The translations under genes were made by a program, and so were the position numbers. Source: Oopsacas minuta (lineage: Eukaryota > Animalia > Porifera). From it: DNA of 64,000 nucleotides. The first letter of the stretch is position 1. Every line of letters begins with the position of its first letter. The stretch lies in assembly GCA_024704765.1 (NCBI GenBank), contig JAKMXF010000221.1, positions 186,001 to 250,000 of the forward strand. The letters are read 5' to 3'. Shown piece by piece: positions 20,153-35,119 of the stretch. Below the pieces are notes generated by a model. That model had not been told where the DNA came from. It made no database searches and saw nothing but the letters and a program-made list of their open reading frames with translations.

Positions 20153-23100
20153 ATGTCCCGGATAATTCTATGTGGAGCGAATTCAGTTGGTAAGACAACT
20201 CTTGCCCAAGACTGGTGTTCTATGAACAAGAATTATCAAATTTGTTGTAAGGTTAGAAGAGATGTTATGGTTGAACACAAAATATCTTCAGAAGATATCC
20301 ACAATTCTTTAAGATCATGTAAGAAGATTTTCTTTAAACTTCAGAGATTAATATTTGAGGAACAGTATAGGAGAGAGAGTCAGCTAGGAGATGCTCTATA
20401 TATTTGTTCCCGAGGACCAGAGCCTCTAGTTGATGCATTCTTAGAAAACTCTCGGAAAGCAGACATTCTCTCTGAGCAAGAGATTGTGAAGAAATGTCTA
20501 GATCGTTATCGAGCTAGTTTAGTAGTCCTCTTGTGTCCGCTAGAGAATGCTCCTGAACACGAGATACTGCCAGACTCTACGAAAACTATGCCTATCTCCC
20601 TGTTTGAGGAGCAGAAGCGTTTCACAAAAGGGCTACATGACACGATGACAACTTTCGGTATACCTTATATGTATATGGACGAGAGGGATCGCGAGAAGCG
20701 AGTTGAGATACTCAAGTTAGCTGTTGAAGGTACAGTCCCGATCCCCATAGAACAGTTCATGGATCAGCGCTGTCTCTCATTCTTCCTCGATACTGGAACT
20801 AAGAGACGAGCTACTTTTCCACCGCCTCTACTCCCTCTTCCCAAACAAGGTAAAGAAGATCGAGTTCGTACATTCGACTTAAATCCAGGTGAAATTCTCT
20901 TGAGTTACCCTCCAATGGATAGTTTCCAGACAAACAGAATGGTAGACAGGTATGGAGAGGATAATTTCGTTCTCCTTCAGTTCCACTCAAAGTTACCTAA
21001 CAGTTACATCAGAGATGTCCTCCGTAAAGGAGTATATGTGAACGGAGATGAGTTCCAATTCCTGGGCTGTAGCTCCAGCGGATTGAAAGGCAGGAAATGT
21101 TATCTCCTGAAAGGTAATATAGAAGATGTACGAGTTGTTCTGGAACAGTGTGGGAACTTCTCTAAGATTAAAATGGTGTCCAAGAGACTGAAGAGGATTA
21201 GTCAGCTGTTCTCTGTAGCTATGAAAACGGGTGTAATGGTCCCTGATGATAAAGTGGAAGATATTGAGGACATAGAGACATCAGGGGGGAACTTTACAGA
21301 TGGGTGTGGATTAGTTGGACTAAATCTTGCATCAAAACTTGCTAAAGGCTGCAATGCACTAATTGAGTGTCCAGAAGATGGAGTACCCACCGTTTTCCAA
21401 ATACGATTTCTTGGCTGTAAGGGTATTCTAACGAAGAGCCCGCATATTGATACAGATTCTATGAAAGTCAGAAAATCTATGAGGAAGTTTAGCTCTGGGA
21501 CAGAGCCTTTCCCTGAAGTCTGGGTATGTGAACATTCTCGCCCATACTCCTATGGACATCTCAATAAACAGTACATAATGTTGTTATCTGGACTAGGGAT
21601 ACGTGATGAAGTATTCCTCACTAAACAAGCTGACTATTTGAAAGCGCTAGAGAGTATGTTGATTGACCCTAGCTTTGCTATCACAATACTTAATTGGCGG
21701 AATCGTCCTGATTTAGCTGCATTTGTTGCAGAACGTGAAACCTTTGCAGAATTCAGGCGAGAAGATATTCAGAATCAGCTGAGATATATTAGAAGCAAGC
21801 TAATCCTCAAGTTAGAGAAATTGAGTATACCTATCCTTGATTCTCGTACCCTGTTCGGTGTATGTGACCCTCTTAATCTGATGGAGTATGGTGAGTGTTT
21901 TATTAGAATTTCAGTTCAGGGTAAGCCTCAAACTCTACATCCCGGTACTAAAGTAACTGTCGGCAAGAATCCATGCTATCTCCTTGGTGACGTCAGAGTT
22001 CTCACAGCTGTAGATCATCCAGAACTCAATCACCTGATTGATTGTATGGTATTCCCAGTTAAAGGTAGAAGTCCTCATTCAGCAGAGATAGCTGGTTCGG
22101 ATCTGGACGGTGACCAGTATTTCGTGTGCTGGGATAAAGATCTCATCCCTCCCCACACAGTTGAACCCTACGACTACCCATCAGTAGAGGCTCACCCCTC
22201 TGACACTGTCACCCGGGAAATGATGATAGACTACTTTTCGGGACAGAAGAACATGATGGGTAAAATAAATGACTACTATGAGTATTGGGCAGATATTGAG
22301 GGGCCAGGGTGTTTTCAATGTGAACAACTTGGAGCTTGGTTCTCAAGGAGTGTAGACTCCTCTAAAACTGGAGATATCGTACGTATTCCACGTCACCTCA
22401 TCCCTCCTCAGCGTGAGAGAAAATCTGATAAAGTTTGGGTGAGGATGCAAGAGATCGCAGCTGATTGTAAAGAAAGGCTGAGTGGAGATACAGCTGATGA
22501 AATTTTAGAAAATTCAAGTTCTGCTTATGTCATTGAAGAGGATTTTATCAGGAATCTCTTAGAGAATACAAAAAGAGGAATTTCTGAATACAAACTATTC
22601 TCTTTGTTATATAAATGGTGCGACGCACAGAAAATCTCTAGAGATGAAAGGAGGGAAAAGCTGATCGAACTTTCTGATTATATCAACTTTGGTTTGTTGA
22701 CAATGAAAGAGAGAGAAGAAGCTATTCAATTGGGTATACCTGTTGCTAATGTCATGAATGCATTGAGTAAGTCTCGACTCCTCAATAAAGAGATGTTACA
22801 ACCTTTCTATCTGGACATTCCTACTTGTGGATGGAAATTTTACTTCCGAGGAAGTACAGCTAATCTTGACTGGAGACATATCTTCTATGCAATGACAAGT
22901 TATCCCGAAACTTTGCTAGTATTAAAACTCCCATATTATGGCGAAAGATTAGCTTTTCATTTAATCGGGACATTTGAAGATGGAGAGTCTATAATCCCTA
23001 AAGGATCAATCATTTCCTACTTTTTCTCCCCTCCATTTGGGTATAATCTAAGATATGTCACTGAGTGTGATTATAATTTGAATCTCACCCCACATATGAT

Positions 23101-26100
23101 ACAAATCTATCGCAGTGATGTTAGAAACACATTTTTGTGGCTAAAAAATGAATGTAGAAGTGATTCAGGTTCAGAATATGATAGAATCAGTATTGATCTA
23201 ACGAGATTTAAGAGAACTATTAGACGAGTAGATAAACACCCTCTTATTCTAAAACTTAATTTCCATTCTGTGGAGGTATTCGTCAAGAGTAATAATATTG
23301 AAGATACGGTATACTTTGATATACTAGAAACAGATCAAGTTGAGCATATAGTTACTACTGGTATTGAGTCATCTGATATTCTCGAAGAGTTACCTAGTGA
23401 TTCTGAAGAGGAAAGAGAAGAAGTTGATCCCTCTAAGTATACGCCATATGCACCTGAAACTTCACTATTAGCTCTTAAGGAATTTGCTAAGAAAGGAGAC
23501 TCTGTGAATTTCCGCAAAGTAATCACAATAATTCCCTCACCTACTCCTGAAATACCACAATTCCCTCGTACTTTATTAACCGAAGAGATCCTTTCTCTCC
23601 TGACTAATATGGTAATTCACCAATCCCATAGAAAAACATCAGAATCAACAATTGAGGATTTGTACGCAATATTTAAATCCGATCATATAGCTATCCCATC
23701 TGCCAAAGACTTACTATTCCTGTTCACTTGTCTTAGCAAGTTACAGCTATTCGATATGGCCACACAACTATCTGATAAACTTATTAGCAAAGTTGACTTG
23801 TCAGGGATTGCTCAGTATTTTGATACTATTTTCCATTGGGAATGGTGGTGTTTCTTATCGCTAAATCTAGCTTGTGAACTGTCAGATAAACTGTATCTTA
23901 TATCTTGTAAACTTGATGCTGGTAAGAAACCAGCTGAGAACACACAGAACACTGATGATTTCGAAACTAACCCCGATCTACTCCAGAATTTAGCTGTAGC
24001 AGCTAATGATGATCCTCCACCTTTAGAAGAGATAGAGCTCAATAACTACAAGCGTTATTATGCATATCTTATGTTAAAACATTTATTAGAGGAAACTCCT
24101 GGAAGAGAAGAAAATGAGAAAGTAAAAGACACTGAAGACAGTGTGTGTATGTTACGAGTACTGCATTCAGAAGATAGACGTGTTAATGTAGAGATAGATA
24201 GTAGTAGTAGTAGTAGTAATGAAGAAGAGAACGAGGAAACTGTTCCAGTTAAACAAGTCAAGAAGAAAAAGAAGAAAAAGTCTAAAACCTGGAAAGCATG
24301 TTTTTCTAGAATCAATAAAGTAACATCCAATAAATTTTCAATAGGTTCATTTGTAAAGATCCGTCTAATGAACAGACTTGCTACAACTCACTCCGGTGAG
24401 CCTATAGCTCTCGGATCTATCTCTGTATATCACAAGAGCCCGGCGGATATCATCGTTGATATACTGGAGCCTGTACCCGAGGCTATTAAGAGAGCTGCTC
24501 GCCTCAAGAAGGGATTCTGGTGTCTGACTCTACTAGGTAATATCACAAGCTTTAAGAGATCAAGCAAAGCTTTACAGAACTTATACACTCCTGGTATTCT
24601 TTCAATCCTAACCTCTCCTCAAGCATTTCCTCCCACAATAGCACCTAAAGATTATGAAGTGGACTTCTTAGCTGTCTCTCCTGATCCCGTAGAGTTACCT
24701 GACAAGAGCACCCCAATACATAACCCCTACCACTCATACAAGGGTTGTACTGCTTGTGAGCGTAGAGATAAAACCCGCTACAATCAGAGTCAAGAGAATG
24801 CGATCCAAGCAGCCCTCACTCAACGACTGATATTAATACATGGCCCCCCTGGTACAGGTAAGACATTTGTTGCTTGTGAGATTGTACATCAGTTATTTCA
24901 TGAAATGAATAAGCAGCCGGATAAAGATGAGAAGTGTAAGATCTTAGTAGCAGCTGAAACCAATAATGCCGTAGATAACCTCACGTATAATCTCGTTAAG
25001 TTAAACATGCGTGTAGTACGTGTTGGCAATAAGAATCAAATTGGTAAGCATTTACATGATTACTCATTGGCTCATCAAGTAGAGATGAAGCGGATTCAGC
25101 TGGGTCAAGACAAGAAAGGAGAGTATCAGTGCCCAAAGTTGAAAAAGGAGATCTTGAATTCAGTGGACATAATAGCTACAACCTGCACTGGGGCAGGTGA
25201 TAATGATCTTAAAACTCTTCAATTTTCTTGTATACTTATCGATGAGGCTACTCAAGCAATAGAGCCAGTTTCGCTGATCTCAATAGCTAAGTCTTGTAAG
25301 AAACTTATACTTATTGGAGATCCTAAACAACTTGCACCGATACTCCCTAGTAACCGTGAATCTCGAGGGCATACTTGTCCTGTAGAAGTTCCTCGCTTTG
25401 AGGCTTTGTGTGAGACTTTGTTTCATAGACTCCACAAAAATATAAAAACATACTTTTTGGATGAACAACACCGCATGCATCCTTATATAGCTGATTTCCC
25501 TTCTAAAGTATTCTATTCAGGAAAGCTGAAAACAGCTGTGAGGAAGGAAGACAGGATAGCACCCAAGCTAGGATTCATGACTTCAAACAAACCTATCGTA
25601 TTTATAGATGTAGACCACCCAGAGCATCGTACTGGATCATCAATCAGGAATGAAAGGGAAGCTGATATTATAGTGGATATTATCAAACAGCTGACTGGAC
25701 TAGCGAAATATAAAGATACAGAAATCGCAATTCTAACTCCCTACACAGCTCAGGTTAAATGCTTAAAAGAGAAACTAGCTTTAGTTTCTAAAGTTGAGGT
25801 ATCTTCTATTGACGCATTCCAAGGCAAGGAGAAAGAAGTTATTGTATTCAGTACAGTAAGGAACAATGATAATGGAGTATTAGGCTTCACAGATAGTCCA
25901 TATCGGATTAATGTACTGCTAACCAGAGCTAAATGTGGTCTTATAGGAGTAGGTAATAGAGATACCCTTAGAGGTTCAAATATTTGGTCAGAATGGACTT
26001 TTCAACACACTCTTTTGACTGTAAGGGAGTTTTATGAGAATGCAACTGTAAATGTAAATGAGGATGATGAAATTCCTAACCAAAATAACAATAACTCTAG

Positions 26101-26338
26101 GAGAGGTACACGATCTAGAGGCAGACCTCAGGGCTACCAGAATTCCTCCAGAGACAGAAATTTGACCCATGTACACCAGAGACATAGACCTAATATTGGT
26201 TGCTTTGTATCGGATACACTACGCTCACATAGACGTTTTAGAGATAACTACCGTGAAGATATCCATTGGAGAGATGTCCCTGTAGATTATTATAAGACTC
26301 CACGCAAGAGCGAGGATAAAGACTGGGAAAAGAATTAG
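20153..26338 (+). CDS. 2061-aa fusion: AAA_28/NadR-like P-loop domain + cellular RNA-dependent RNA polymerase + BACK-like helical region + Upf1-like SF1B helicase; intronless
   Basis: Walker A GANSVGKT (aa 8-15). RdRP motifs FTDGCG, QIRFLGCKG, KNPC, GSDLDGD (DLDGD at 22100-22114). Helicase motifs GPPGTGKT (24842-24865), TNNAVD, IDEATQ, GDPKQL, QHRMHP, TPYTAQ, FQGKEK, NVLLTRAK. Confidence 0.93.
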   Translation: MSRIILCGANSVGKTTLAQDWCSMNKNYQICCKVRRDVMVEHKISSEDIHNSLRSCKKIFFKLQRLIFEEQYRRESQLGDALYICSRGPEPLVDAFLENSRKADILSEQEIVKKCLDRYRASLVVLLCPLENAPEHEILPDSTKTMPISLFEEQKRFTKGLHDTMTTFGIPYMYMDERDREKRVEILKLAVEGTVPIPIEQFMDQRCLSFFLDTGTKRRATFPPPLLPLPKQGKEDRVRTFDLNPGEILLSYPPMDSFQTNRMVDRYGEDNFVLLQFHSKLPNSYIRDVLRKGVYVNGDEFQFLGCSSSGLKGRKCYLLKGNIEDVRVVLEQCGNFSKIKMVSKRLKRISQLFSVAMKTGVMVPDDKVEDIEDIETSGGNFTDGCGLVGLNLASKLAKGCNALIECPEDGVPTVFQIRFLGCKGILTKSPHIDTDSMKVRKSMRKFSSGTEPFPEVWVCEHSRPYSYGHLNKQYIMLLSGLGIRDEVFLTKQADYLKALESMLIDPSFAITILNWRNRPDLAAFVAERETFAEFRREDIQNQLRYIRSKLILKLEKLSIPILDSRTLFGVCDPLNLMEYGECFIRISVQGKPQTLHPGTKVTVGKNPCYLLGDVRVLTAVDHPELNHLIDCMVFPVKGRSPHSAEIAGSDLDGDQYFVCWDKDLIPPHTVEPYDYPSVEAHPSDTVTREMMIDYFSGQKNMMGKINDYYEYWADIEGPGCFQCEQLGAWFSRSVDSSKTGDIVRIPRHLIPPQRERKSDKVWVRMQEIAADCKERLSGDTADEILENSSSAYVIEEDFIRNLLENTKRGISEYKLFSLLYKWCDAQKISRDERREKLIELSDYINFGLLTMKEREEAIQLGIPVANVMNALSKSRLLNKEMLQPFYLDIPTCGWKFYFRGSTANLDWRHIFYAMTSYPETLLVLKLPYYGERLAFHLIGTFEDGESIIPKGSIISYFFSPPFGYNLRYVTECDYNLNLTPHMIQIYRSDVRNTFLWLKNECRSDSGSEYDRISIDLTRFKRTIRRVDKHPLILKLNFHSVEVFVKSNNIEDTVYFDILETDQVEHIVTTGIESSDILEELPSDSEEEREEVDPSKYTPYAPETSLLALKEFAKKGDSVNFRKVITIIPSPTPEIPQFPRTLLTEEILSLLTNMVIHQSHRKTSESTIEDLYAIFKSDHIAIPSAKDLLFLFTCLSKLQLFDMATQLSDKLISKVDLSGIAQYFDTIFHWEWWCFLSLNLACELSDKLYLISCKLDAGKKPAENTQNTDDFETNPDLLQNLAVAANDDPPPLEEIELNNYKRYYAYLMLKHLLEETPGREENEKVKDTEDSVCMLRVLHSEDRRVNVEIDSSSSSSNEEENEETVPVKQVKKKKKKKSKTWKACFSRINKVTSNKFSIGSFVKIRLMNRLATTHSGEPIALGSISVYHKSPADIIVDILEPVPEAIKRAARLKKGFWCLTLLGNITSFKRSSKALQNLYTPGILSILTSPQAFPPTIAPKDYEVDFLAVSPDPVELPDKSTPIHNPYHSYKGCTACERRDKTRYNQSQENAIQAALTQRLILIHGPPGTGKTFVACEIVHQLFHEMNKQPDKDEKCKILVAAETNNAVDNLTYNLVKLNMRVVRVGNKNQIGKHLHDYSLAHQVEMKRIQLGQDKKGEYQCPKLKKEILNSVDIIATTCTGAGDNDLKTLQFSCILIDEATQAIEPVSLISIAKSCKKLILIGDPKQLAPILPSNRESRGHTCPVEVPRFEALCETLFHRLHKNIKTYFLDEQHRMHPYIADFPSKVFYSGKLKTAVRKEDRIAPKLGFMTSNKPIVFIDVDHPEHRTGSSIRNEREADIIVDIIKQLTGLAKYKDTEIAILTPYTAQVKCLKEKLALVSKVEVSSIDAFQGKEKEVIVFSTVRNNDNGVLGFTDSPYRINVLLTRAKCGLIGVGNRDTLRGSNIWSEWTFQHTLLTVREFYENATVNVNEDDEIPNQNNNNSRRGTRSRGRPQGYQNSSRDRNLTHVHQRHRPNIGCFVSDTLRSHRRFRDNYREDIHWRDVPVDYYKTPRKSEDKDWEKN

Positions 26339-26550
26339 TTCACAATGATACAGTCAACATTTTAAAGGTATGCTTCCTTCTTGGATAAATTTCTTAGTGT
26401 GTAGACTATAAATTGGTATTTATATATTATTTCATAAATTTCATAAATTATCTTCAGACTGTATAGTTTTACTCCTGCAATCAGGAACTTAGAAATGCCT
26501 TACCAACTTAGCCTCAATTTCTACATTAATTTAGCTAATAATTAATTAGA

Positions 26551-27939
26551 ATGCAACTACATACGTTCCTTACACTTCTTTTGGTATGTCAAACACTGAG
26601 CTTATCAACTGGTGCCAAGCCTGTTTCTAACTCTAAGCTCTCCAGCTCGAATAACTGTTCCATTAATAATGGAGACTGTTCAAGTTGTCTCAGTCAGCTC
26701 AACTCGCAACATCTTGGCCTATGCGGTTATTGTCAAGCATCAGATGGTAACTGCTCTGACCCCTCTCGTTGTCCTTGTTTAGCAGGAAGCTTGTATGGAC
26801 CGAAGGATTCCAATTGCGAAGAATCCATATCCATTTGGTACTATGAAGCTTGTCCCGACCAGCCTACAGACCAAACATCTACCTACACAGTCTCACTACG
26901 ACTCCTAAACGTAGCTGCAGTAGATCTTATCGCTGGTACCTTTGGTGCAGATTTTCTGATCTACTTCGAGGGTAATCGGGTTGCGTACACAGATAGAGAA
27001 TGCAATTCAGACAATGGTGTATGTTTCAATATTCTTAACTCAGTAGGAGCTCCTATAATCGTAAAGTATCAAACTTATTTCCATATACAAGGCACGTTCT
27101 CATTTGAAGTTGATCTAGCAGATTATCCGTTTGACAATCAGACTCTACCTCTATTGATACAGGACTCATATAGTTCTGCATTAAAATTACAATGGAAATT
27201 GCCTAAAGATGATAAGACGGGAATTGATTCACATCTCACTCTTTCAAGCTGGTATTATGACAGTAACTCATGGGATGACTCTTTGTATCAGCGATACAAC
27301 CCAATCCTGGATGAGAACTTTTCAACTTTCGTCTTCAAGTTCCTAATACAGAGACCTCGGGCAGTTGGATTTATCAAGGGACTACTACCCCCTCTATTTA
27401 TAGTTTTGGTGATTTGTGCATCTTTCTCACTACCAGCTAAAGAGATGAGCAGTCGTATCTGGATAGGAGGTTCTCTACTTATATCTGTTGTCTTGTTCCA
27501 CTCTACCTTAGCAGAAGAAACTCCACGAAAAGGACAGCTAACGTTTGCTGATAACTTTATAATATCAGTCTATGTATTCATATTCATTTCACTTGCAGTT
27601 AACATCGTTATTATAAGGCTGTTCCGGTCTGGAGCAGAGAAACTAGCTAGCAAAATTCAACACTTGACTGAGATCATCTCATGGCCTGCTTTGTTCATTT
27701 TCTTCTTTGGACATTTCTACCTAAAATGGAATACATTCCTTGTTCTCTTTCTTGTTGCTATGTCCTCTCTGCTTATACTATTGTGTATATTTGTCATAAA
27801 GATAGTATCCTCAAGGACTAAACTAAAATGGCGCAAGTCATGTTTGAGAATGAGACAGAATCAAAATAAATACAAAGATAAGGAAGGAATCGTGAATGAG
27901 GGAACTTCTTCCTTCCTGCGAGAAGGGAATGTCCTCTGA
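26551..27939 (+). CDS. Cys-less (Pro-loop) pentameric ligand-gated ion channel subunit with signal peptide, Cys-rich PSI-like N-terminal module and five predicted TM helices
   Basis: Signal peptide, then CSSCL...CGYC...C. Ligand-binding-domain strands VDLIAGTFGADF and GTFSFEVDLADYPFDNQTL. M1 LLPPLFIV, M2 SRIWIGGSLLISVVLFH, loop TPRKGQLTFAD, then M3, M4 and an extra TM. Confidence 0.8.
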   Translation: MQLHTFLTLLLVCQTLSLSTGAKPVSNSKLSSSNNCSINNGDCSSCLSQLNSQHLGLCGYCQASDGNCSDPSRCPCLAGSLYGPKDSNCEESISIWYYEACPDQPTDQTSTYTVSLRLLNVAAVDLIAGTFGADFLIYFEGNRVAYTDRECNSDNGVCFNILNSVGAPIIVKYQTYFHIQGTFSFEVDLADYPFDNQTLPLLIQDSYSSALKLQWKLPKDDKTGIDSHLTLSSWYYDSNSWDDSLYQRYNPILDENFSTFVFKFLIQRPRAVGFIKGLLPPLFIVLVICASFSLPAKEMSSRIWIGGSLLISVVLFHSTLAEETPRKGQLTFADNFIISVYVFIFISLAVNIVIIRLFRSGAEKLASKIQHLTEIISWPALFIFFFGHFYLKWNTFLVLFLVAMSSLLILLCIFVIKIVSSRTKLKWRKSCLRMRQNQNKYKDKEGIVNEGTSSFLREGNVL

Positions 27940-28080
27940 TAAACTATTTGTACAAATTGACCTAAGCTTTTTGATGTTAAACTTTGATTATTCATGGAAT
28001 GCTCTTGCTATAAATTAGGATTATTCCTTATTTTCATTTATTTATATAATTTGGAATATTTATACGGGTTATGATTAGTA

Positions 28081-28806
28081 ATGCCACGAACTCACATCTC
28101 CAAATCACATACCAGAATATACTACCTATTGTTATACTTGTACAATCTACTGATACTCAGACCTATTCACTATCTCCTTCTCCTACACAAGAGGCATATA
28201 TTACAATTTCAGCCTGTGACGTATCATTGCCCTCCTCCCTCAAAATTATGTCTCTCTCAACTCAGGAAACTCCCAATAAAGACTTTGGTATTAGATTTAG
28301 ATGAAACTCTCATACACTCACAACACAATTGTATAATACCTTATGACTTTTCTATAAATGTTAAAATAGACGGAATTCCTACTCAGTTCTATGTGTACAA
28401 GCGACCTCATTTAGATTTCTTTTTGAAAATGGTGAGCGAATGGTACTACGTGGTATTATTCACGGCTAGCTTGGAAACATATGCTAATGCTATCGCTACA
28501 CAAATAGACCCAACACAGAAGTATATAAAGAAGCGATATTTCAGACATAACTGCAGTGTAGACTTTACAGGGTATACGAAAGATCTTAAAATTATTCAAA
28601 AAGATTTATCTCGTATTTTCATAATTGATAATTCTCCTACAGCTTATAAAGGTAACCCAGATAATGCTATTCCCATCAAATCATGGTATGCTGACAATAA
28701 TGACCAATGTCTGTTAGAATTGCTGCCTATACTAGATGCACTGAGATTCACAAAAGATGTAAGATCTGTTCTTAAGAGGAACATCCACTTACACTCGTTG
28801 TGGTAA
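28081..28806 (+). CDS. CTDNEP1: CTD nuclear envelope phosphatase 1 (Dullard)
   Basis: N-terminal hydrophobic anchor, LVLDLDETLIHS (DxDxT), KRPHLDFFL, FTAS, IIDNSP, PDNAIPIKSW. Confidence 0.9.
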   Translation: MPRTHISKSHTRIYYLLLYLYNLLILRPIHYLLLLHKRHILQFQPVTYHCPPPSKLCLSQLRKLPIKTLVLDLDETLIHSQHNCIIPYDFSINVKIDGIPTQFYVYKRPHLDFFLKMVSEWYYVVLFTASLETYANAIATQIDPTQKYIKKRYFRHNCSVDFTGYTKDLKIIQKDLSRIFIIDNSPTAYKGNPDNAIPIKSWYADNNDQCLLELLPILDALRFTKDVRSVLKRNIHLHSLW

Positions 28807-28982
28807 ATTCAATATATCGGATATACAAGAGAGTTGTAAGAGTTTTTAAATATATTTGTAATATAATATATAAATAAATTTATCATATATCTTTAATTTG
28901 AATTGTATCAATTGGTTGTTCAACACAGATATTATATTATGCTTGATTATTGTAGTATACTTATTAGAAATAAGCTACTCCA

Positions 28983-30890
28983 ATGATTCTATTGTTATCA
29001 GGTTTTGTTGTTGGAGCAATATCAGCTGCATTTGTGTTTCCTCTTCTCTGCTCTGTGGTGAAGGCTCTATTGGGTATTGGACCTTCCGGCAAGGTACAAG
29101 TAGCTCCTCCTATCCAGGAGGTGATTGATGCAGGAGGTGGTGAGTATCGCAGTGAGGAGCATTTTGCTCCTAAATTAACAGGGAAGTTGTTTTTATGGTT
29201 TAGTAACTTCATGTGGACTCCATTTGGTAAAGAATGGGTATTAAGTAAGTTAATGCGAGACAATCATCTGTTTGATGCTAGAGAACGCTATCTGCCTGAA
29301 GCAGCTACTTTCTATCCCACTCCTCCGTTTATTCCCTTCCCTGAACAAAGTGTGAGGGAGGATGGGAAGAGTGAGAAAGATGAGATTGATACTCTGATTG
29401 GTTGTGTTCCTTCTCGTTCCAAAGATTCCTCTGCTGAGACTGATGAGTTTGTATTCCCTAGTATCCTGGATTATCTACATGCATATAGATGTGGTCGTGT
29501 GACACCTGTAATAGTAGCAGAACGGATAATTGAAAGTATTCGAGCATCTGATTCTCTATCTCCTCCTCTGCGTGCCTTTGTTCAGTGGAATGAGACTGAG
29601 ATTCGTAAACAAGCAGAAGAGTCTACACGGAGATACAGAGATAAGGATAACATCCGTCCTTTGGAAGGAATACCTGTTGGAGTAAAAGAGAGTATACCAA
29701 CTAAACCTTACATCCTCAGAGTTGGATCTAGTTTCCTACCAATAGGTGCACAAGCTATCTCAAACTGGGAAGAGGCTGAGGTTGTGTTAAGACTGAGACA
29801 AGCTGGCGCTATAATTATTGGAGTTACTAATCTGCATGAATTTGGTGTGGGACCTTCTGGATCTAATGTAAATAAGCTGCATCAAACAGCTCGTAATCCT
29901 TATGACATGAGTAGATATCCAGGAGGGAGTAGTAGTGGATCTGGTGCAGCTGTAGCTTCTGGATTAATCCCTCTTGCTTTGGGGACAGATGGAGGAGGAT
30001 CTATCCGTATTCCTTCTTCTATTTCCGGTCTTGTGGGCCTCAAAGCTACATTTGGTAGAGTTACGGAAGGTAAAATGATAAGCAGTGCTCCCACAATCAC
30101 TAACATAGGACCCTTGTGTACTTCAGTTGTAGACACAGCTCTGTCATATCTTTTATTAGCAGGCCCTGGTCCTAATGATCCTAACGGTCTCCAACAAGGT
30201 CCTGTCACTATTGGCAACTTTCTAACTGCTAAAGATAATGCTAAGGGAATGAAGGTTGGTATTTATCGAGCTTGGTTTAATCACTGTGAACCTGATGTGT
30301 CCAAAGTGTGTCAGGAAGCTCTGAAGTGGATTACAGATGCTGGCGCTGAATTGGTAGATATACATATTCCAGAAATGAATGCTACTTATATATCTCTTGT
30401 TTCTATTTTCCTAAGTGAATTAACCAGCGCTTACAAATACGATTTTTATGACCATTTCAAAGATATCAATAGTGACACTAAACAGAATCTAGCAATTGGT
30501 GATGCTATCTCATCTGCGGACTATACAGTAGCGAGTAGGCAAAGAACACGGGCTATACAGGTTCTGAAGAGTGTATTTTCTAAGGTTGATATACTCGTTA
30601 CCCCCACTACTGCTTGTACTGCTCATATTATGAGTCCCAGCCACTTATCTCATGGCTGTGCAAATATTAAGACTACTACGAAACTAAGTAGATTCACTGT
30701 AATAGGAAATCTGACAGGAGCGCCTGCAATAGCTATACCAGTGGGATATGACTCAAACAACCTTCCTGTCTCTCTGCAACTTATGACTAGGTGGTGGAGG
30801 GAAGATCTATTGTTCATGTTAGCTAGTCAGATCGAGAAGAGAGTAGCTAAAAGGAAACCAAAGATATTTTATGATATTCTGCAACTATAA
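28983..30890 (+). CDS. Fatty-acid amide hydrolase-like amidase, copy 1
   Basis: Amidase-signature triad: PVGVKE (Lys), GGSSSGS, GTDGGGSIRIP. The start may instead use a short upstream exon (acceptor at 29001). Confidence 0.9.
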   Translation: MILLLSGFVVGAISAAFVFPLLCSVVKALLGIGPSGKVQVAPPIQEVIDAGGGEYRSEEHFAPKLTGKLFLWFSNFMWTPFGKEWVLSKLMRDNHLFDARERYLPEAATFYPTPPFIPFPEQSVREDGKSEKDEIDTLIGCVPSRSKDSSAETDEFVFPSILDYLHAYRCGRVTPVIVAERIIESIRASDSLSPPLRAFVQWNETEIRKQAEESTRRYRDKDNIRPLEGIPVGVKESIPTKPYILRVGSSFLPIGAQAISNWEEAEVVLRLRQAGAIIIGVTNLHEFGVGPSGSNVNKLHQTARNPYDMSRYPGGSSSGSGAAVASGLIPLALGTDGGGSIRIPSSISGLVGLKATFGRVTEGKMISSAPTITNIGPLCTSVVDTALSYLLLAGPGPNDPNGLQQGPVTIGNFLTAKDNAKGMKVGIYRAWFNHCEPDVSKVCQEALKWITDAGAELVDIHIPEMNATYISLVSIFLSELTSAYKYDFYDHFKDINSDTKQNLAIGDAISSADYTVASRQRTRAIQVLKSVFSKVDILVTPTTACTAHIMSPSHLSHGCANIKTTTKLSRFTVIGNLTGAPAIAIPVGYDSNNLPVSLQLMTRWWREDLLFMLASQIEKRVAKRKPKIFYDILQL

Positions 30891-31050
30891 ATTATGATAT
30901 TTATTTATCGTTTGTAAATTGAATGTGGAATGTTGTGGTACAAAGTTTATTGTATACAATTATTAGCTTTCTCATCTTTATTGCATTTTTGAGTCCAAAT
31001 TATGATTAAAAAAGTTGTATATTTTAACGAAAATATTATTAGCTTTTGAT

Positions 31051-32955
31051 ATGGGGCAGTATATGTCATTTGTTGTTGGAGCAATATCAGCTGCATTTGT
31101 GTTTCCTCTTCTCTGCTCTGTGGTGAAGGCTCTATTAGGTATTGGGCCTTCCGGTAAGGTACAAGTAGCTCCTCCTATCCAGGAGGTGATTGATGCAGGA
31201 GGTGGTGAGTATCGCAGTGAGGAGCATTTTGCTCCTAAATTAACAGGGAGGTTGTTATTGTTTTTAAGCCGTTTCTTGTGGACTCCATTTGGTAAAGAAT
31301 GGGTATTAAGTAAGTTAATGCGAGACAATCATCTGTTTGATGCTAGAGAACGCTATCTGCCTGAAGCAGCTACTTTCTATCCCACTCCTCCGTTTATTCC
31401 CTTCCCTGAACAAAGTGTGAGGGAGGATGGGAAGAGTGAGAAAGATGAGATTGATACTCTGATTGGTTGTGTTCCTCCTCGTTCCAAAGATTCCTCTGCT
31501 GAGACTGATGAGTTTGTATTCCCTAGTATCCTGGATTATCTACATGCATATAGATGTGGTCGTGTGACACCTGTAATAGTAGCAGAACGGATAATTGAAA
31601 GTATTCGAGCATCTGATTCTCTATCTCCTCCTCTGCGTGCCTTTGTTCAGTGGAATGAGACTGAGATTCGTAAACAAGCAGAAGAGTCTACACGGAGATA
31701 CAGAGATAAGGATAACATCCGTCCTTTGGAAGGAATACCTGTTGGAGTTAAAGAGCACTTTCTCACTAAACCATATATTCTTCGAATTGGTTGTGAATTT
31801 GTTCCGACAGCAGCTCATTGCTTGGACGGTAAACCTGACAGTGCAGCTGTTATACTAATGCGAAATGCTGGAGCTATAATAGTTGGTGTTACTAACATCC
31901 ATGATAATGGGATTGGAGCTACAGGTTCGAATCCTAACAGTCTGCATCTAACCACCCGTAATCCATATGATCTACACAAGTACTCAGGAGGTAGTAGCAG
32001 TGGGTCTGGTGTCGCTGTGGCTTCTGGACTCGTTCCCCTCACACTGGGGACAGATGGAGGAGGGTCAGTTCGTATCCCTGCTGCTCTTTGTGGGATTGTA
32101 GGACTCAAACCAACTTTTGGAAGGATTTCCGAGGTACGCATGGTGCCTGCTGCATTTACCTTGGCTCATCCCGGACCAATGTGTACCTCCGTTGTAGACA
32201 CAGCTCTATCATATCTTCTGTTAGCAGGCCCTGATCTTAATGAACCATACGGTCTCCAACAAGGTCCTGTCACTATTGGTAAGTTTTTGACAGCCACAGA
32301 TAGCGTGAAAGGAATGAAGGTTGGAATTTATCGAGCTTGGTTTAATCACTGTGATCCTGATGTGTCCAGAGTGTGCCAGGAAGCTCTGAAGTGGATTACA
32401 GATGCTGGAGCTGAATTGGTAGATATACATATTCCAGAAATGAATGCTACTATTCCTGCATGCGTTTCCACTTTTTTGACAGAAATATTGAGTGTGTATC
32501 GCTATGATTTACCAACAAGGTTCAAACAGTTATTTGGGGAAACACTGACTAGTATGGGTGTTGCTAGTCAAGTTTCAGCGGCAGATTACACTGTAGCAGG
32601 TAGACAGAGAACTCGTGCTATCAAAACGCTAGAACATGTTTTCAAACAAGTTGACTTTATAGTTACTCCTACTACTGCTGGGACTGCTCACACTATCGCT
32701 TTGAAAGCTGTTGCATATGGTGAGAGTAATATCGATTTCATAGCCAAATTAACTAGGTTCACTATGCTAGGAAATCTGACAGGAGCGCCTGCAATAGCTA
32801 TACCAGTGGGATATGACTCTAGCAATCTTCCTGTCTCTCTGCAGCTGATGACTAGGTGGTGGAGAGAAGATCTATTATTCATGTTAGCTAGTCAGATCGA
32901 AAAGAGAGTAGCTAAAAGGAAACCAAAGATATTTTATGATATTCTACACTCATGA
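31051..32955 (+). CDS. Fatty-acid amide hydrolase-like amidase, copy 2
   Basis: Same triad intact. First ATG at 31051, alternative at 31063 (the track start is TTG). Confidence 0.9.
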   Translation: MGQYMSFVVGAISAAFVFPLLCSVVKALLGIGPSGKVQVAPPIQEVIDAGGGEYRSEEHFAPKLTGRLLLFLSRFLWTPFGKEWVLSKLMRDNHLFDARERYLPEAATFYPTPPFIPFPEQSVREDGKSEKDEIDTLIGCVPPRSKDSSAETDEFVFPSILDYLHAYRCGRVTPVIVAERIIESIRASDSLSPPLRAFVQWNETEIRKQAEESTRRYRDKDNIRPLEGIPVGVKEHFLTKPYILRIGCEFVPTAAHCLDGKPDSAAVILMRNAGAIIVGVTNIHDNGIGATGSNPNSLHLTTRNPYDLHKYSGGSSSGSGVAVASGLVPLTLGTDGGGSVRIPAALCGIVGLKPTFGRISEVRMVPAAFTLAHPGPMCTSVVDTALSYLLLAGPDLNEPYGLQQGPVTIGKFLTATDSVKGMKVGIYRAWFNHCDPDVSRVCQEALKWITDAGAELVDIHIPEMNATIPACVSTFLTEILSVYRYDLPTRFKQLFGETLTSMGVASQVSAADYTVAGRQRTRAIKTLEHVFKQVDFIVTPTTAGTAHTIALKAVAYGESNIDFIAKLTRFTMLGNLTGAPAIAIPVGYDSSNLPVSLQLMTRWWREDLLFMLASQIEKRVAKRKPKIFYDILHS

Positions 32956-33211
32956 AGTTATTACCAAATCACTCTATGCACTGAATTGAACCTTTGTAGA
33001 ATTGTTACTAACTCATTAGTAACTAACTTCTATATCGAAATTGGATGTATTTATTTATTTTTTATGATATATATTGTATTTTGTATTATCTTTTGAATAT
33101 TCAGTTCTGCTTCACTTCATTAATATAATATACTATAAGTTATGATAATTATGAAATTTGATTCTCAATCTCAGATATTCAACACAGGTAAATATATTTC
33201 AGAGCTCATTT

Positions 33212-35119
33212 ATGATATTCTACATTTCATTTGTTGTTGGAGCAATATCAGCTGCATTTGTGTTTCCTCTTCTCTGCTCTGTGGTGAAGGCTCTATTGGG
33301 TATTGGACCTTCCGGTAAGATACAAGTAGCTCCTCCTATCCAGGAGGTGATTGATGCAGGAGGTGGTGAGTATCGCAGTGAGGAGCATTTTGCTCCTAAA
33401 TTAACAGGGAAGTTGTTTTTATGGTTTAGTAACTTCATGTGGACTCCATTTGGTAAAGAATGGGTATTAAGTAAGTTAATGCGAGACAATCATCTGTTTG
33501 ATGCTAGAGAACGCTATCTGCCTGAAGCAGCTACTTTCTATCCCACTCCTCCGTTTATTCCCTTCCCTGAACAAGGTGTGAGGGAGGATGGGAAGAGTGA
33601 GAAAGATGAGATTGATACTCTGATTGGTTGTGTTCCTTCTCGTTCCAAAGATTCCTCTGCTGAGACTGATGAGTTTGTATTCCCTAGTATCCTGGATTAT
33701 CTACATGCATATAGATGTGGTCGTGTGACACCTGTAATAGTAGCAGAACGGATAATTGAAAGTATTCGAGCATCTGATTCTCTATCTCCTCCTCTGCGTG
33801 CCTTTGTTCAGTGGAATGAGACTGAGATTCGTAAACAAGCAGAAGAGTCTACACGGAGATACAGAGATAAGGATAACATCCGTCCTTTGGAAGGAATACC
33901 TGTTGGAGTTAAAGAGGAATATCTAGCGAGTAATTACAGACTTTTGAATGGTTTGTCATTTTTGCCAGTTTGTGCTCAGAATCTAGACAGAAAACGACAA
34001 GATAGTGAGCCTGTTGCCAGACTTAAGAATGCTGGAGCAGTCCTTATAGGCATTACTAACATGCATGAGATTGGTATAGGTTCTTCTGGATCTAATGTAA
34101 ATAAGCTGCATCAAACAGCTCGTAATCCTTATGACATGAGTAGATATCCAGGAGGGAGTAGCAGTGGATCTGGTGCAGCTGTAGCTTCTGGATTAATCCC
34201 TCTTGCTTTGGGGACAGATGGAGGAGGATCTATCCGTATTCCTTCGTCGCTGTGTGGAATTGTTGGGCTGAAGCCAACTTTTGGGAGAATATCTTGTGCT
34301 AGAATGTGTCCAGTTGGAATGACTGTCGTTAATGCTGGTCCCATGTGTAACTCAATACAAGATGCAGCTCTCGCATATTTGTTGTTATCAGGACGTGACC
34401 CTGAAGATGTGAACACTGTACAACAAGGACCTGTATCCCTAGACCAGTATCTAGACCACAGTCCTGATTTAACTGGCCTGAAAGTAGGCGTGTATGATAC
34501 ATGGTTCAATCACTCTGATCAAGAGGTGAGGTCTGGATGCAGGACTGCTCTCACTTGGCTGCAAGAAGCTGGTGCTGAGATTGTAGAGATTAAGATTCCA
34601 GAGATTTCTCAGTCTCAAAACGCTCATCTTGTTGCACTGTTATCAGAGTTACTCGCTGCTTATAGATATGACTTCCCTGAACATTTCAAGGCATTCAATA
34701 GAGAGTCTATCCTGGGTTTATCATTGGGTACAACTTTGTCAGCAGCTGATTATGTAGTAGCAGGACGCCAGAGAACAAGAGCTATAAAGGTTTATGACCA
34801 TTTATTTAAGCGAGTTGATATCATTGCTACACCTACCACTGCTCGCACTGCCCCAGTTATCCCTCAAGGAGCTGACCTATACGGAGAAAGTAACCTACAG
34901 AATACTCTTAAGATTGCTCGTTATACTATACAATCTAACTTAACTGGTGTGCCTGCTATTTGTCTACCCGTGTCTTACGATGCTAATAACATGCCTATCT
35001 CCCTCCAGCTGATGTCAAGTTGGTGGAAAGAAGATCTCCTATTGCATGTTGCAAGTGTAGTAGAGAATCGAGCTAGGAAGATGAAACCTAAGCTCTACTA
35101 TGATATTCTTAACATGTAG
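33212..35119 (+). CDS. Fatty-acid amide hydrolase-like amidase, copy 3
   Basis: Same triad intact. First ATG at 33212 (the track start is TTG). Confidence 0.9.
   Translation: MIFYISFVVGAISAAFVFPLLCSVVKALLGIGPSGKIQVAPPIQEVIDAGGGEYRSEEHFAPKLTGKLFLWFSNFMWTPFGKEWVLSKLMRDNHLFDARERYLPEAATFYPTPPFIPFPEQGVREDGKSEKDEIDTLIGCVPSRSKDSSAETDEFVFPSILDYLHAYRCGRVTPVIVAERIIESIRASDSLSPPLRAFVQWNETEIRKQAEESTRRYRDKDNIRPLEGIPVGVKEEYLASNYRLLNGLSFLPVCAQNLDRKRQDSEPVARLKNAGAVLIGITNMHEIGIGSSGSNVNKLHQTARNPYDMSRYPGGSSSGSGAAVASGLIPLALGTDGGGSIRIPSSLCGIVGLKPTFGRISCARMCPVGMTVVNAGPMCNSIQDAALAYLLLSGRDPEDVNTVQQGPVSLDQYLDHSPDLTGLKVGVYDTWFNHSDQEVRSGCRTALTWLQEAGAEIVEIKIPEISQSQNAHLVALLSELLAAYRYDFPEHFKAFNRESILGLSLGTTLSAADYVVAGRQRTRAIKVYDHLFKRVDIIATPTTARTAPVIPQGADLYGESNLQNTLKIARYTIQSNLTGVPAICLPVSYDANNMPISLQLMSSWWKEDLLLHVASVVENRARKMKPKLYYDILNM

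What the first reader, a model, noticed from the sequence alone, without database searches (positions are those of the whole stretch)
26551..27939. Cys-less, bacterial-style pentameric ligand-gated ion channel with a Cys-rich PSI-like cap
Seen: signal peptide, a roughly 70-aa Cys-rich module (CSSCL..CGYC..C..C.C), then a short pLGIC ectodomain. Its signature loop (FSFEVDLADYPFDNQTL) keeps YPFD but lacks both Cys-loop cysteines, followed by a 4-TM pore module with a very short M3-M4 loop like GLIC/ELIC. Intronless. Established: Cys-less Pro-loop channels occur in bacteria and scattered eukaryotes, and classical Cys-loop receptors are generally reported absent from sponges. Inference: if the host is a nerveless early animal, this is a candidate chemosensory or excitability channel, possibly acquired horizontally or an ancient relic.
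Basis: partly seen in the sequence, partly recalled or inferred. Interest (0 to 1): 0.75.

Follow-up and report, generated by a model that had tools for sequence, protein, structure and literature searches.

The report
Glass-sponge Cys-less pentameric channel gene
This intact gene, which appears to be transcribed, encodes a pentameric ligand-gated ion channel subunit in a glass sponge, a phylum usually said to lack such channels; its only close relatives are uncharacterised cnidarian proteins, and it has a cysteine-rich cap, a fifth membrane helix and a tryptophan in the pore.

Summary
The ORF at 26551-27939 (+), 462 aa, is real and intact. [quoted passage not shown] The signature loop keeps YPFD but has Phe and Leu where the Cys-loop cysteines sit, and the M3-M4 link is only a few residues.

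- The cysteine-rich cap (10 invariant Cys) gave no PSI match in any search.
- There are five hydrophobic helices, not four. An extra helix after M4 should put a basic tail in the cytoplasm.
- The gene is not a bacterial import. It lies in a eukaryote-only clade (support 100/99).

Its sister group (97/96) is a set of uncharacterised cnidarian proteins (Hydractinia, Nematostella, corals). These share the cap, the extra helix and an invariant Trp at pore position 2'.

Six related assemblies keep the gene; the three whose loci I fetched keep it in the same neighbourhood, under strong purifying selection. A run that behaves like RNA-seq covers it.

Best reading: an old animal Cys-less channel family kept in glass sponges and Cnidaria. 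Ligand, ion selectivity and conduction are unknown. Papers report no pLGIC in sponges, apart from Corticium (2026), and none surveyed a glass sponge. The species name comes from earlier scan notes, not from my own test.

The parts
26546..26549 (+). TTAG one base before the start codon: candidate spliced-leader acceptor
   Evidence: Sequence read. The same layout at 28075-28078 and 28952-28955 carries a foreign leader (AAAAAACTTAC) in contigs of run X4. No joint at the pLGIC gene itself appeared among the loose ends listed.
26551..27939 (+). Complete single-exon coding sequence, 462 aa plus stop: pLGIC subunit
   Evidence: ORF. Six orthologs at 64-75% identity, with colinear single ORFs in the three loci fetched. 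No joints in laid contigs.
26551..26616 (+). Probable signal peptide (residues 1-22)
   Evidence: Hydrophobic N-terminal helix 2-21 in the model. Conserved N-x-S/T sequons downstream (N35, N67, N196 invariant) fit an extracellular location. No signal-peptide predictor was available.
26653..26856 (+). Cysteine-rich N-terminal cap (residues 35-102), ten invariant Cys, ending in the WYYE-x-CP motif
   Evidence: Shared only with the cnidarian orthologs among the 125 aligned relatives. No Pfam, PDB-profile or Atlas match. Model pLDDT is below 50 here, so the fold is unknown.
26863..27354 (+). Extracellular beta-sandwich domain (residues 105-268), including the conserved pair C151/C158 and the invariant RYNP hairpin at the loop C position (248-251)
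   Evidence: Model pLDDT is mostly above 90. Aligned to the ectodomains of GluCl, GlyR, GABA-A, GLIC, ELIC and sTeLIC. Invariant residues.
27097..27147 (+). Pro-loop (residues 183-199), FSFEVDLADYPFDNQTL, without the Cys-loop cysteines
   Evidence: Phe185 and Leu199 occupy the cysteine positions. Pro193 is invariant in 125 of 125 and Asp195 is present in 111 of 125 relatives.
27358..27726 (+). M1-M4 pore module (residues 270-392). M2 is 296-323, with R302 at 0', W304 at 2', S308 at 6', I311 at 9', L315 at 13', E322 at 20' and P325 at 23'. The M3-M4 link is a few residues.
   Evidence: Helices. Ungapped M2 alignment to sTeLIC and GABA-A alpha1. Structural alignment runs to the end of M4 of the solved chains. 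Nonsynonymous difference is 0.05-0.11 against saturated synonymous sites.
27733..27813 (+). Extra fifth hydrophobic helix, 'M5' (residues 395-421)
   Evidence: Highest hydropathy of the protein, 3.11 over 19 residues. Lies beyond the part aligned to any solved pLGIC. All 21 rows of the eukaryotic clade have 51-123 residues after M4 with a hydrophobic stretch, whereas the 104 other rows have a median of 10 residues after M4.
27814..27939 (+). Basic C-terminal tail (residues 422-462, 11 K/R against 4 D/E) and stop codon; predicted cytoplasmic
   Evidence: Composition. The topology is inferred from the positive-inside rule and the odd number of helices. It is the least conserved part of the protein.

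Best explanation
The ORF encodes one subunit of a Cys-less pentameric ligand-gated ion channel (a Pro-loop receptor). It belongs to an old animal family now found in glass sponges and Cnidaria.

Shown:
- Residues 105-394 have the pLGIC fold.
- The Cys-loop cysteines and the cytoplasmic M3-M4 domain are absent.
- Six related assemblies keep the gene, and the three loci fetched show the same neighbourhood. It is under strong purifying selection and is covered by contigs of an RNA-like run.
- It lies in a eukaryote-only clade, sister to cnidarian orthologs.

Inferred mechanism:
- Five copies assemble around a pore lined by M2. Only one such gene was found per assembly, which suggests a homopentamer.
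- An extracellular signal acts on the beta-sandwich domain. It could be a small molecule, an ion or pH. The strictly conserved RYNP hairpin at the loop C position is the most likely site.
- The signal passes through the Pro-loop and the M2-M3 loop to the pore.
- Acidic residues at -4' (E298) and at 20'/21' (E322, E323), and the absence of the anion-channel Pro-Ala at -2'/-1', weakly favour cations.
- The disulfide-rich cap replaces the N-terminal helix of animal Cys-loop receptors and sits on top of the ectodomain. Its role (ligand capture, assembly or matrix contact) is open.
- The fifth helix takes the chain back across the membrane. A basic tail is then cytoplasmic and could provide the trafficking or regulatory handle that the missing M3-M4 domain gives in other animal receptors.
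For: - Fold: Foldseek's 50 listed best matches are all pLGICs, and at least 500 matches reach E 0.001 or better; E is about 1e-19 and TM is up to 0.79 by target. VIA Z is 22-23 and rmsd 2.1-2.8 Å over 266-278 residues. Model 105-394 spans whole chains of GluCl, GlyR, GABA-A, GLIC, ELIC and sTeLIC. The ESM Atlas model of the same protein matches prokaryotic-type pLGIC clusters at TM 0.71-0.84.
- Sequence: sTeLIC E 7e-10, GABA-A chimeras 5e-7, GLIC 1e-4.
- Family motifs: P193, R302, P325 and D334 are conserved in 114-125 of 125 relatives.
- Conservation: M1-M3 are almost identical in 7 orthologs. Nonsynonymous difference is 0.05-0.11 in the membrane domain while synonymous sites are saturated.
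- Synteny: the order RdRP-helicase, this gene, NIF phosphatase, amidases is kept in three other assemblies.
- Expression: run X4 shows depth steps at gene borders and a gap in the intergenic stretch 26404-26505, and it covers the ORF.
- Phylogeny: the 5-helix eukaryotic clade has support 100/99 against 49 prokaryote-sized rows. Neighbours of three protist members are eukaryotic genes such as PI3K, protein kinase and ALG-type glycosyltransferase.
- Sister group: named cnidarian orthologs are sister to the sponge clade at 97/96, and their internal topology matches the species tree. All ten cap cysteines, C151/C158, RYNP, W304 and E322 are invariant between the two phyla.
Against: - No functional datum exists for any member of this family, so ligand, selectivity and even conduction are inferred.
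- Trp at the pore-lining 2' position is invariant in the family and absent from the other 115 aligned relatives. It could narrow or block the pore.
- Pfam's curated thresholds are not reached: Neur_chan_memb scores 19-26 bits against a cutoff of 28.1, and Neur_chan_LBD does not match.
- The cap is modelled at pLDDT below 50.
- The kind of run X4 is not on record, so expression is likely rather than proven.
- The species was not identified independently here.
- Canonical animal Cys-loop receptors and the lophotrochozoan Cys-less group were not in my trees.
Confidence: 0.72

Rival explanations
1. Recent horizontal transfer from a bacterium, or contamination by symbiont DNA: the gene is simply a prokaryotic GLIC/sTeLIC-type channel sitting in, or assembled into, the sponge genome.
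For: The build is prokaryote-like: no Cys-loop, no M3-M4 domain, single exon. The best PDB sequence match is the bacterial sTeLIC. The Atlas structural neighbours are bacterial and archaeal clusters.
Against: - The gene lies between eukaryotic genes (RdRP-helicase, NIF phosphatase) on a 700-kb contig. The same order is kept in three other assemblies.
- GC content is the same as its surroundings.
- It is separated from all 49 prokaryote-sized rows at support 100/99 and is sister to cnidarian genes.
- The cap and the fifth helix are absent from the prokaryote-sized relatives.
- Most genes of glass sponges are single-exon anyway (PMC10282587).
Confidence: 0.03
2. Ancient lateral transfer among eukaryotes: glass sponges obtained the gene from a cnidarian-line donor or the reverse, or both phyla obtained it from a protist. 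It was not inherited from the first animals.
For: The distribution is patchy. Among 1.84 billion representatives, only the glass-sponge cluster and two cnidarian clusters reach E below 1e-40. No hit came from other sponge classes, ctenophores, placozoans or bilaterians at that level. Published work already considers lateral transfer for Cys-less metazoan channels and for the Corticium pLGICs (PMC4795631, PMC13335744).
Against: - The two phyla are reciprocally monophyletic on long stems, so neither nests in the other.
- The cnidarian subtree matches the species tree, and sponge synteny is old, with saturated synonymous sites.
- Sponge-cnidarian identity (33-37%) is far below the 64-77% found within each phylum. 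This fits a split older than either crown group.
- The pattern can also be explained by losses, which are frequent in this superfamily (PMC4795631).
Confidence: 0.15
3. A pLGIC-fold protein that no longer works as an ion channel, for example a receptor or scaffold whose pore is closed by the ring of Trp at 2'.
For: W304 aligns without gaps to the pore-lining 2' residue of GABA-A alpha1 and sTeLIC. It is invariant in the family and absent elsewhere, where the position is G, A, T or S in 99 of 115 rows. Loop C is reduced to a four-residue turn.
Against: The pore-lining pattern is otherwise canonical and extremely conserved: R at 0', S at 6', a hydrophobic 9' gate, L at 13', P at 23' and D334. 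That level of constraint on M2 is what is expected of a working pore. The small residues at 4'/5' (GG or DG) next to the Trp may let it pack away from the lumen.
Confidence: 0.12
4. A classical neurotransmitter receptor (GABA, glycine, acetylcholine or serotonin type) of the kind used at synapses.
For: Solved GABA-A, glycine and GluCl receptors are among the best structural matches. The Oopsacas genome paper reports components for GABA and glutamate synthesis and signalling (PMC10280926).
Against: There is no Cys-loop, no M3-M4 domain and no long loop C. Identity to those receptors is only 13-16%. Animal Cys-loop receptors did not reach the top 150 of 1254 profile hits, while prokaryote-sized and protist rows did. 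The anion-channel Pro-Ala at -2'/-1' and the cation-channel Glu at -1' are both absent.
Confidence: 0.05

Closest known systems
Uncharacterised cnidarian proteins: Hydractinia symbiolongicarpus LOC130656852, the Nematostella vectensis 'predicted protein', Exaiptasia LOC110240897, Porites lutea 'proton-gated ion channel-like', and Xenia, Acropora and Paramuricea entries
   Same: Same architecture end to end: leader, cysteine-rich cap with all ten sponge cysteines conserved, Cys-less Pro-loop with DNQTL, the C151/C158 pair, the RYNP hairpin, Trp at 2', a very short M3-M4 link, and a hydrophobic stretch after M4 followed by a tail. Sister clade at support 97/96.
   Different: Identity to the sponge proteins is only 33-37%. 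The cnidarian cap has two more cysteines and an insert. Their tails are longer and end in a conserved KPCFPG...PNK-x-A motif that the sponge proteins lack. None has been studied functionally as far as the searched papers show.
Eukaryotic Cys-less 'Pro-loop receptors' of protists and invertebrates (Jaiteh, Taly and Henin 2016, PMC4795631)
   Same: No Cys-loop cysteines and the invariant Pro-loop proline. The gene groups with protist sequences (an MMETSP transcript and picoeukaryote-type contigs) apart from prokaryotes. That paper places 'an isolated sequence from Nematostella' in the Cys-less clade. It is probably the ortholog found here, but I did not check this.
   Different: That survey found no hit in Porifera. 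It trimmed N- and C-terminal segments, so it reports neither the cap nor a fifth helix. I did not test how this family relates to the lophotrochozoan and deuterostome Cys-less groups.
Prokaryotic pLGICs: sTeLIC (6fl9), GLIC (3eam), ELIC
   Same: Compact subunit, no Cys-loop, M3-M4 link of a few residues, and the same fold (Z about 22, rmsd 2.2-2.6 Å, 18-20% identity). sTeLIC is the best sequence match in the PDB and also has an acidic residue at -4' and Arg at 0'.
   Different: The sponge protein is not in their clade (100/99). The prokaryotic chains end about 10 residues after M4, and none of the aligned prokaryote-sized relatives has a cysteine-rich cap. They have D or T at 2', not Trp. sTeLIC is gated by alkaline pH and GLIC by acid (bioRxiv 10.64898/2026.01.07.698087). 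Nothing shows that the sponge protein senses pH.
Animal Cys-loop receptors (nicotinic, 5-HT3, GABA-A, glycine, GluCl)
   Same: Same overall fold and the same coupling elements: the [FY]PFD loop, Arg at 0', the hydrophobic 9' gate and the M2-M3 proline.
   Different: The sponge protein has no Cys-loop disulfide, no N-terminal helix, no cytoplasmic M3-M4 domain and a minimal loop C. It has a fifth helix and a cytoplasmic C-terminus in place of an extracellular one.
PSI (plexin-semaphorin-integrin) domain, PF01437
   Same: The first half of the cap has a similar cysteine rhythm (C-x6-C-x2-C ... C-G-[YF]-C), which recalls the C-x-W-C core of PSI. This is my recollection of the motif, not a test.
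   Different: No Pfam match at E up to 10 for any of 9 caps. No plexin, semaphorin, integrin or MET chain came up in a profile search of the PDB at E up to 10. The Atlas gave no PSI-bearing cluster. The cap has ten cysteines over 67 residues, against eight over about 50.

Membership tests
pLGIC / Pro-loop receptor superfamily | Subunit fold: extracellular beta-sandwich followed by a four-helix bundle M1-M4 | tested here: met
   AlphaFold2 model with a 125-row alignment: pLDDT 81, pTM 0.71. Foldseek's 50 listed best matches are all pLGICs, E about 1e-19. VIA Z 22-23, rmsd 2.1-2.8 Å, model 105-394 against whole chains.
pLGIC / Pro-loop receptor superfamily | Invariant proline in the beta6-beta7 loop ([FY]-P-[FL]-D), and conserved coupling and pore residues (Arg 0', Pro 23', Asp in M3) | tested here: met
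   Y192-P193-F194-D195. P193 is present in 125 of 125, R302 in 114 of 125, P325 in 122 of 125 and D334 in 125 of 125 aligned relatives.
pLGIC / Pro-loop receptor superfamily | Curated Pfam thresholds for Neur_chan_LBD (PF02931) and Neur_chan_memb (PF02932) | tested here: not met
   Neur_chan_memb scores 19.1-26.1 bits against a cutoff of 28.1. There is no LBD match even at E 10 on the isolated ectodomain. This explains why domain-based surveys would miss the gene. Fold and profile evidence override it.
pLGIC / Pro-loop receptor superfamily | Assembly as a pentamer and ligand-gated ion conduction | not testable with these tools
   No multimer prediction or model coordinates were available, and there are no functional data for any family member.
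Animal Cys-loop receptors | Disulfide-bonded Cys-loop (two Cys 13 residues apart flanking the FPFD motif) | tested here: not met
   Phe185 and Leu199 occupy the two positions, and no Cys occurs there in any ortholog. The conserved C151/C158 pair lies elsewhere in the ectodomain.
Animal Cys-loop receptors | Cytoplasmic domain between M3 and M4 | tested here: not met
   M3 ends at 359 and the next helix begins at 363. The stretch aligns residue for residue with the short link of sTeLIC.
Eukaryotic Cys-less Pro-loop clade (PMC4795631) | Groups with Cys-less eukaryotic sequences apart from prokaryotic pLGICs | tested here: met
   A 17-row clade (7 sponge, 2 cnidarian-type, 8 protist-type) has support 100/99 against 49 prokaryote-sized rows. 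Protist members are flanked by eukaryotic genes or come from MMETSP. Canonical Cys-loop receptors and lophotrochozoan Cys-less sequences were not in the tree.
Sponge-cnidarian capped five-helix subfamily (defined here) | N-terminal ten-Cys cap, C151/C158 pair, RYNP hairpin, Trp at 2', and a hydrophobic helix after M4 | tested here: met
   All are invariant or present in 7 glass-sponge and 11 cnidarian-type sequences. The clade has support 97/96.
Prokaryotic pLGICs (GLIC/ELIC/sTeLIC type) | Membership of the prokaryotic clades, with the chain ending shortly after M4 | tested here: not met
   Prokaryotic rows form one side of a branch at 100/99. Their median length after M4 is 10 residues, against 70 here.
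PSI domain (PF01437) | Significant match to the PSI profile or to PSI-containing solved chains | tested here: not met
   No Pfam hit at E up to 10 for 9 caps. The profile search of the PDB returned only three chance-level hits, none with PSI. The Atlas gave none. The fold itself could not be tested because the model is below pLDDT 50 there.

The most novel reading that the evidence does not exclude
The gene may represent an unrecognised animal subfamily of pentameric channels. Its marks are a disulfide-rich cap, a fifth transmembrane helix with a cytoplasmic tail in place of the M3-M4 domain, and an aromatic ring at pore position 2'. On this reading the family dates to the first animals and survives only in glass sponges and cnidarians. 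In the glass sponge it would be the ligand-gated trigger or modulator of the syncytial action potential that arrests feeding. That action potential is a known behaviour whose receptor is not known.
Probability: 0.15. Interest if true: 0.85.

Novelty: new variant of a known kind. Interest (0 to 1): 0.62.

Why it matters
Reviews and surveys of nervous-system origins state that sponges lack pentameric ligand-gated channels. The 2016 inventory found none in Porifera. A 2026 survey of four sponges found them only in Corticium and could not tell inheritance from transfer. No glass sponge was examined. Here a glass sponge has one conserved gene that appears to be expressed, with orthologs in cnidarians. 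This argues that at least one Cys-less branch of the superfamily was present before sponges and cnidarians split and was later lost many times.

The gene falls below Pfam's thresholds, which may explain why domain-based surveys missed it.

The architecture also poses testable structural questions. What does a pLGIC do with a fifth helix and a cytoplasmic tail? What does a ten-cysteine cap add? Can a pore with Trp at 2' conduct? Glass sponges are the only sponges known to propagate action potentials (general knowledge of the field, not tested here). A ligand-gated channel is therefore an obvious candidate input, though nothing here links the two.

Tried and rejected
- A first AlphaFold2 run on the 7 close orthologs alone failed (pLDDT 38). 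It worked only after distant relatives were added.
- PSI identity of the cap gave nothing in Pfam on the isolated cap and on 9 caps, in a profile search of the PDB, or in the Atlas by features and structure.
- A word-based search with the sponge protein, and another with a mixed alignment, found only the six orthologs and weak bacterial hits. The cnidarian relatives appeared only when the metatranscriptome sequence P0009 was used as query.
- I tried to name the source of P0009 and P0164 from run and sample accessions in papers and found nothing. The named Hydractinia hit later made a hydrozoan origin likely.
- Bacterial origin and contamination were rejected on synteny, GC content and trees.
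- The Oopsacas genome paper, including its supplements, has no mention of Cys-loop or ligand-gated channels. The Aphrocallistes paper was checked in its main text only and has none either. A search for 'fifth transmembrane' together with pLGIC found no paper.
- dN/dS ratios could not be given for most pairs because synonymous sites are saturated. I report proportions instead.
- I could not measure the pore radius or the C151-C158 distance, because model coordinates are not exposed to scripts.
- I did not identify the species independently. The name Oopsacas minuta is taken from earlier scan notes.
Full report
**1. What is in the sequence**

The ORF listing gives a single uninterrupted ORF at 26551..27939 (+), 462 aa. 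It sits 212 bases after a 2061-aa RdRP-helicase gene. It lies 141 bases before a 241-aa NIF-type phosphatase gene, which is followed by three tandem amidase genes, all on the same strand. GC content is about 38% and does not change at the gene.

The protein starts with a hydrophobic leader. A module of ten cysteines follows (residues 35-102), and then the loop FSFEVDLADYPFDNQTL. In that loop, Phe185 and Leu199 occupy the places of the two Cys-loop cysteines.

**2. Is it a pentameric ligand-gated channel subunit?**

Pfam alone does not establish this. Neur_chan_memb scores 19-26 bits, below its 28.1 cutoff, and the ligand-binding-domain model does not match at all. A phmmer search of PDB sequences is clearer. 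The bacterial channel sTeLIC scores E 7e-10 over residues 187-384. GABA-A chimeras, GABA-A delta and GLIC follow.

A first AlphaFold2 model from seven close orthologs was useless (pLDDT 38). With 125 relatives from the exhaustive profile search, the model reached pLDDT 81 and pTM 0.71, with residues 100-440 mostly above 90.

- Foldseek's 50 listed best matches are all pLGICs, with E about 1e-19; at least 500 matches reach E 0.001 or better.
- VIA-align gives Z 22-23 and rmsd 2.1-2.8 Å over 266-278 residues.
- Model residues 105-394 cover whole chains of GluCl, GlyR, GABA-A, GLIC, ELIC and sTeLIC up to the end of their M4.
- The ESM Atlas's own model of this protein matches prokaryotic-type pLGIC clusters at TM 0.71-0.84.

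Pro193, Arg302 (0'), Pro325 (23') and Asp334 are conserved in 114-125 of 125 aligned relatives. The fold and the family are settled.

**3. Anatomy, with corrections**

(a) The cap. Its spacing is C-x6-C-x2-C-x11-C-x2-C-x6-C-x5-C-x-C-x12-C-x11-C, and it ends in WYYE-x-CP. No PSI match appears. Pfam gave nothing at E up to 10 on nine caps. A profile search of the PDB gave three chance-level hits without PSI. The Atlas gave nothing. The model is below pLDDT 50 there, so the fold is unknown and the PSI label is unsupported.

(b) The ectodomain (105-268). It is compact, lacks the N-terminal helix of animal receptors, and has only a four-residue turn where loop C sits. That hairpin (R248-Y249-N250-P251) is invariant across phyla. 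A second conserved cysteine pair, C151/C158, lies between beta2 and beta6.

(c) M1-M4 (270-392). Only a few residues separate M3 and M4, as in prokaryotic channels.

(d) A fifth helix. After M4 come a short turn and a helix at 395-421. It is the most hydrophobic segment of the protein (3.11 over 19 residues) and lies outside everything that aligns to solved channels. A tail with 11 K/R against 4 D/E follows. By the positive-inside rule the tail should be cytoplasmic, whereas ordinary pLGICs end outside the cell. All 21 rows of the eukaryotic clade have 51-123 residues after M4 with a hydrophobic stretch. The 104 other rows have a median of 10 residues.

(e) The pore. The M2 alignment to GABA-A alpha1 and sTeLIC is ungapped. 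It gives Ser at -2' and -1', Arg at 0', Trp304 at 2', Ser at 6', Ile at 9', Leu at 13' and Glu at 20' and 21'. Trp at 2' occurs in exactly the ten sponge and cnidarian-type rows of 125. The position is G, A, T or S in 99 of the other 115. I could not measure the model's pore because coordinates are not exposed.

**4. Is it a live gene of the host?**

Six orthologs at 64-75% identity come from six long-contig assemblies. Three of them, fetched with flanks, keep the order RdRP-helicase, this gene, NIF, amidases.

Synonymous sites are saturated (proportion 0.70 or more). Nonsynonymous proportions are 0.05-0.11 in M1-M4, 0.11-0.15 in the ectodomain and 0.20-0.27 in the cap. M1-M3 are almost identical in all seven proteins.

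Laid contigs show no joint in the gene. One run (X4, kind not on record) behaves like RNA-seq. Its depth changes stepwise at gene borders and nearly vanishes in the intergenic stretch 26404-26505, and it covers the ORF. The same run joins a foreign leader (AAAAAACTTAC) to TAG acceptors just upstream of the next two genes. The pLGIC start codon has the same TTAG one base upstream.

**5. Host**

Earlier notes of this scan name the glass sponge Oopsacas minuta. I did not verify the species. Several features fit what is published for glass-sponge genomes (PMC10282587, PMC10280926). The genome here is compact, with mostly single-exon genes. It shows spliced-leader trans-splicing, and it keeps strong microsynteny with relatives.

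**6. Relatives and origin**

The exhaustive profile search found 1254 hits. After the gene's own cluster comes P0009 (E 2e-86), which also has the cap. Protist-type sequences follow, and then many prokaryote-sized ones of about 300 aa.

- A careful tree (LG+C20) puts 7 sponge, 2 P0009-type and 8 protist-type rows in one clade at 100/99 against 49 other rows.
- Those other rows include sequences named from Bacillota, Anaerolineae and Woesearchaeota.
- Three protist members lie beside eukaryotic genes (PI3K, protein kinase, ALG-type glycosyltransferase), and two are MMETSP transcripts.

Searching with P0009 then gave named cnidarian proteins from Hydractinia, Nematostella, Exaiptasia, Porites, Xenia, Acropora and Paramuricea. 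They share the ten cap cysteines, C151/C158, DNQTL, RYNP, Trp at 2' and Glu at 20' with the sponge proteins, at 33-37% identity.

In a 38-row tree the sponge clade (100/100) is sister to the cnidarian clade (100/99), joined at 97/96. The cnidarian subtree follows the species tree, with hydrozoan-type sequences on one side. On the other side are Octocorallia, Actiniaria and Scleractinia.

This makes bacterial transfer or contamination very unlikely. It favours descent from an early animal ancestor followed by many losses. An old eukaryote-to-eukaryote transfer cannot be excluded.

**7. What is known**

- Jaiteh et al. 2016 (PMC4795631) described Cys-less eukaryotic Pro-loop receptors, including 'an isolated sequence from Nematostella'. 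They found none in Porifera, and they trimmed the termini.
- A 2026 study found pLGICs in only one of four sponges, Corticium, and left their origin open. No hexactinellid was included (PMC13335744).
- A 2026 preprint again reports none in Porifera.
- The main texts of the two glass-sponge genome papers do not mention such channels, and the Oopsacas supplements do not either.
- I found no paper on a fifth helix in pLGICs, and none on this cnidarian family other than Jaiteh et al. 2016.

**8. Verdict**

This is a glass-sponge member of the Cys-less branch of a known superfamily. It defines, with its cnidarian orthologs, a variant architecture (cap, fifth helix, Trp at 2') that I could not find described. 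Function, ligand, selectivity and cell type are open.

Noticed in passing
window 28075-28081 and 28952-28983: Contigs of run X4 carry the same foreign 5' letters (AAAAAACTTAC) joined at TAG acceptors just before the start codons of the NIF-phosphatase gene and the first amidase gene. This looks like spliced-leader trans-splicing. Earlier scan notes report it widely in this genome, and it is published for glass sponges.
   Followed up: partly
window 28983-30890, 31015-32955, 33158-35119: Three tandem genes encode amidase-signature (FAAH-like) proteins of 635, 646 and 653 aa. At least two tandem amidase genes follow in each of the three fetched relatives: three in L001 and L014, two within the stretch of L013.
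   Followed up: no
window 25300-29300 (run X5, organism B): A second organism label holds the whole locus at roughly 95-96% identity, with small indels only in intergenic stretches. It is a close relative or a divergent population of the host.
   Followed up: no
L002:1640-1690: The hydrozoan-type ortholog transcript, which is polyadenylated in L010, has a tRNA-like stretch in antisense in its 3' UTR, possibly a tRNA-derived SINE.
   Followed up: no
alignment A5, last 40 columns (cnidarian orthologs P0190-P0197, P0164): Most anthozoan orthologs and two medusozoan-type rows (P0190, P0164) end in a conserved cysteine-containing tail motif (KPCFPG ... C-x-KQ ... PNK-x-A). Hydractinia, P0009 and the glass-sponge proteins lack it. 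It may be a lipidation or docking signal on the predicted cytoplasmic tail.
   Followed up: no
window 20153-26338: The upstream neighbour is a 2061-aa single-exon RdRP fused to an SF1 helicase. It is kept next to the channel gene in all three fetched relatives. An earlier scan note already treats it.
   Followed up: no
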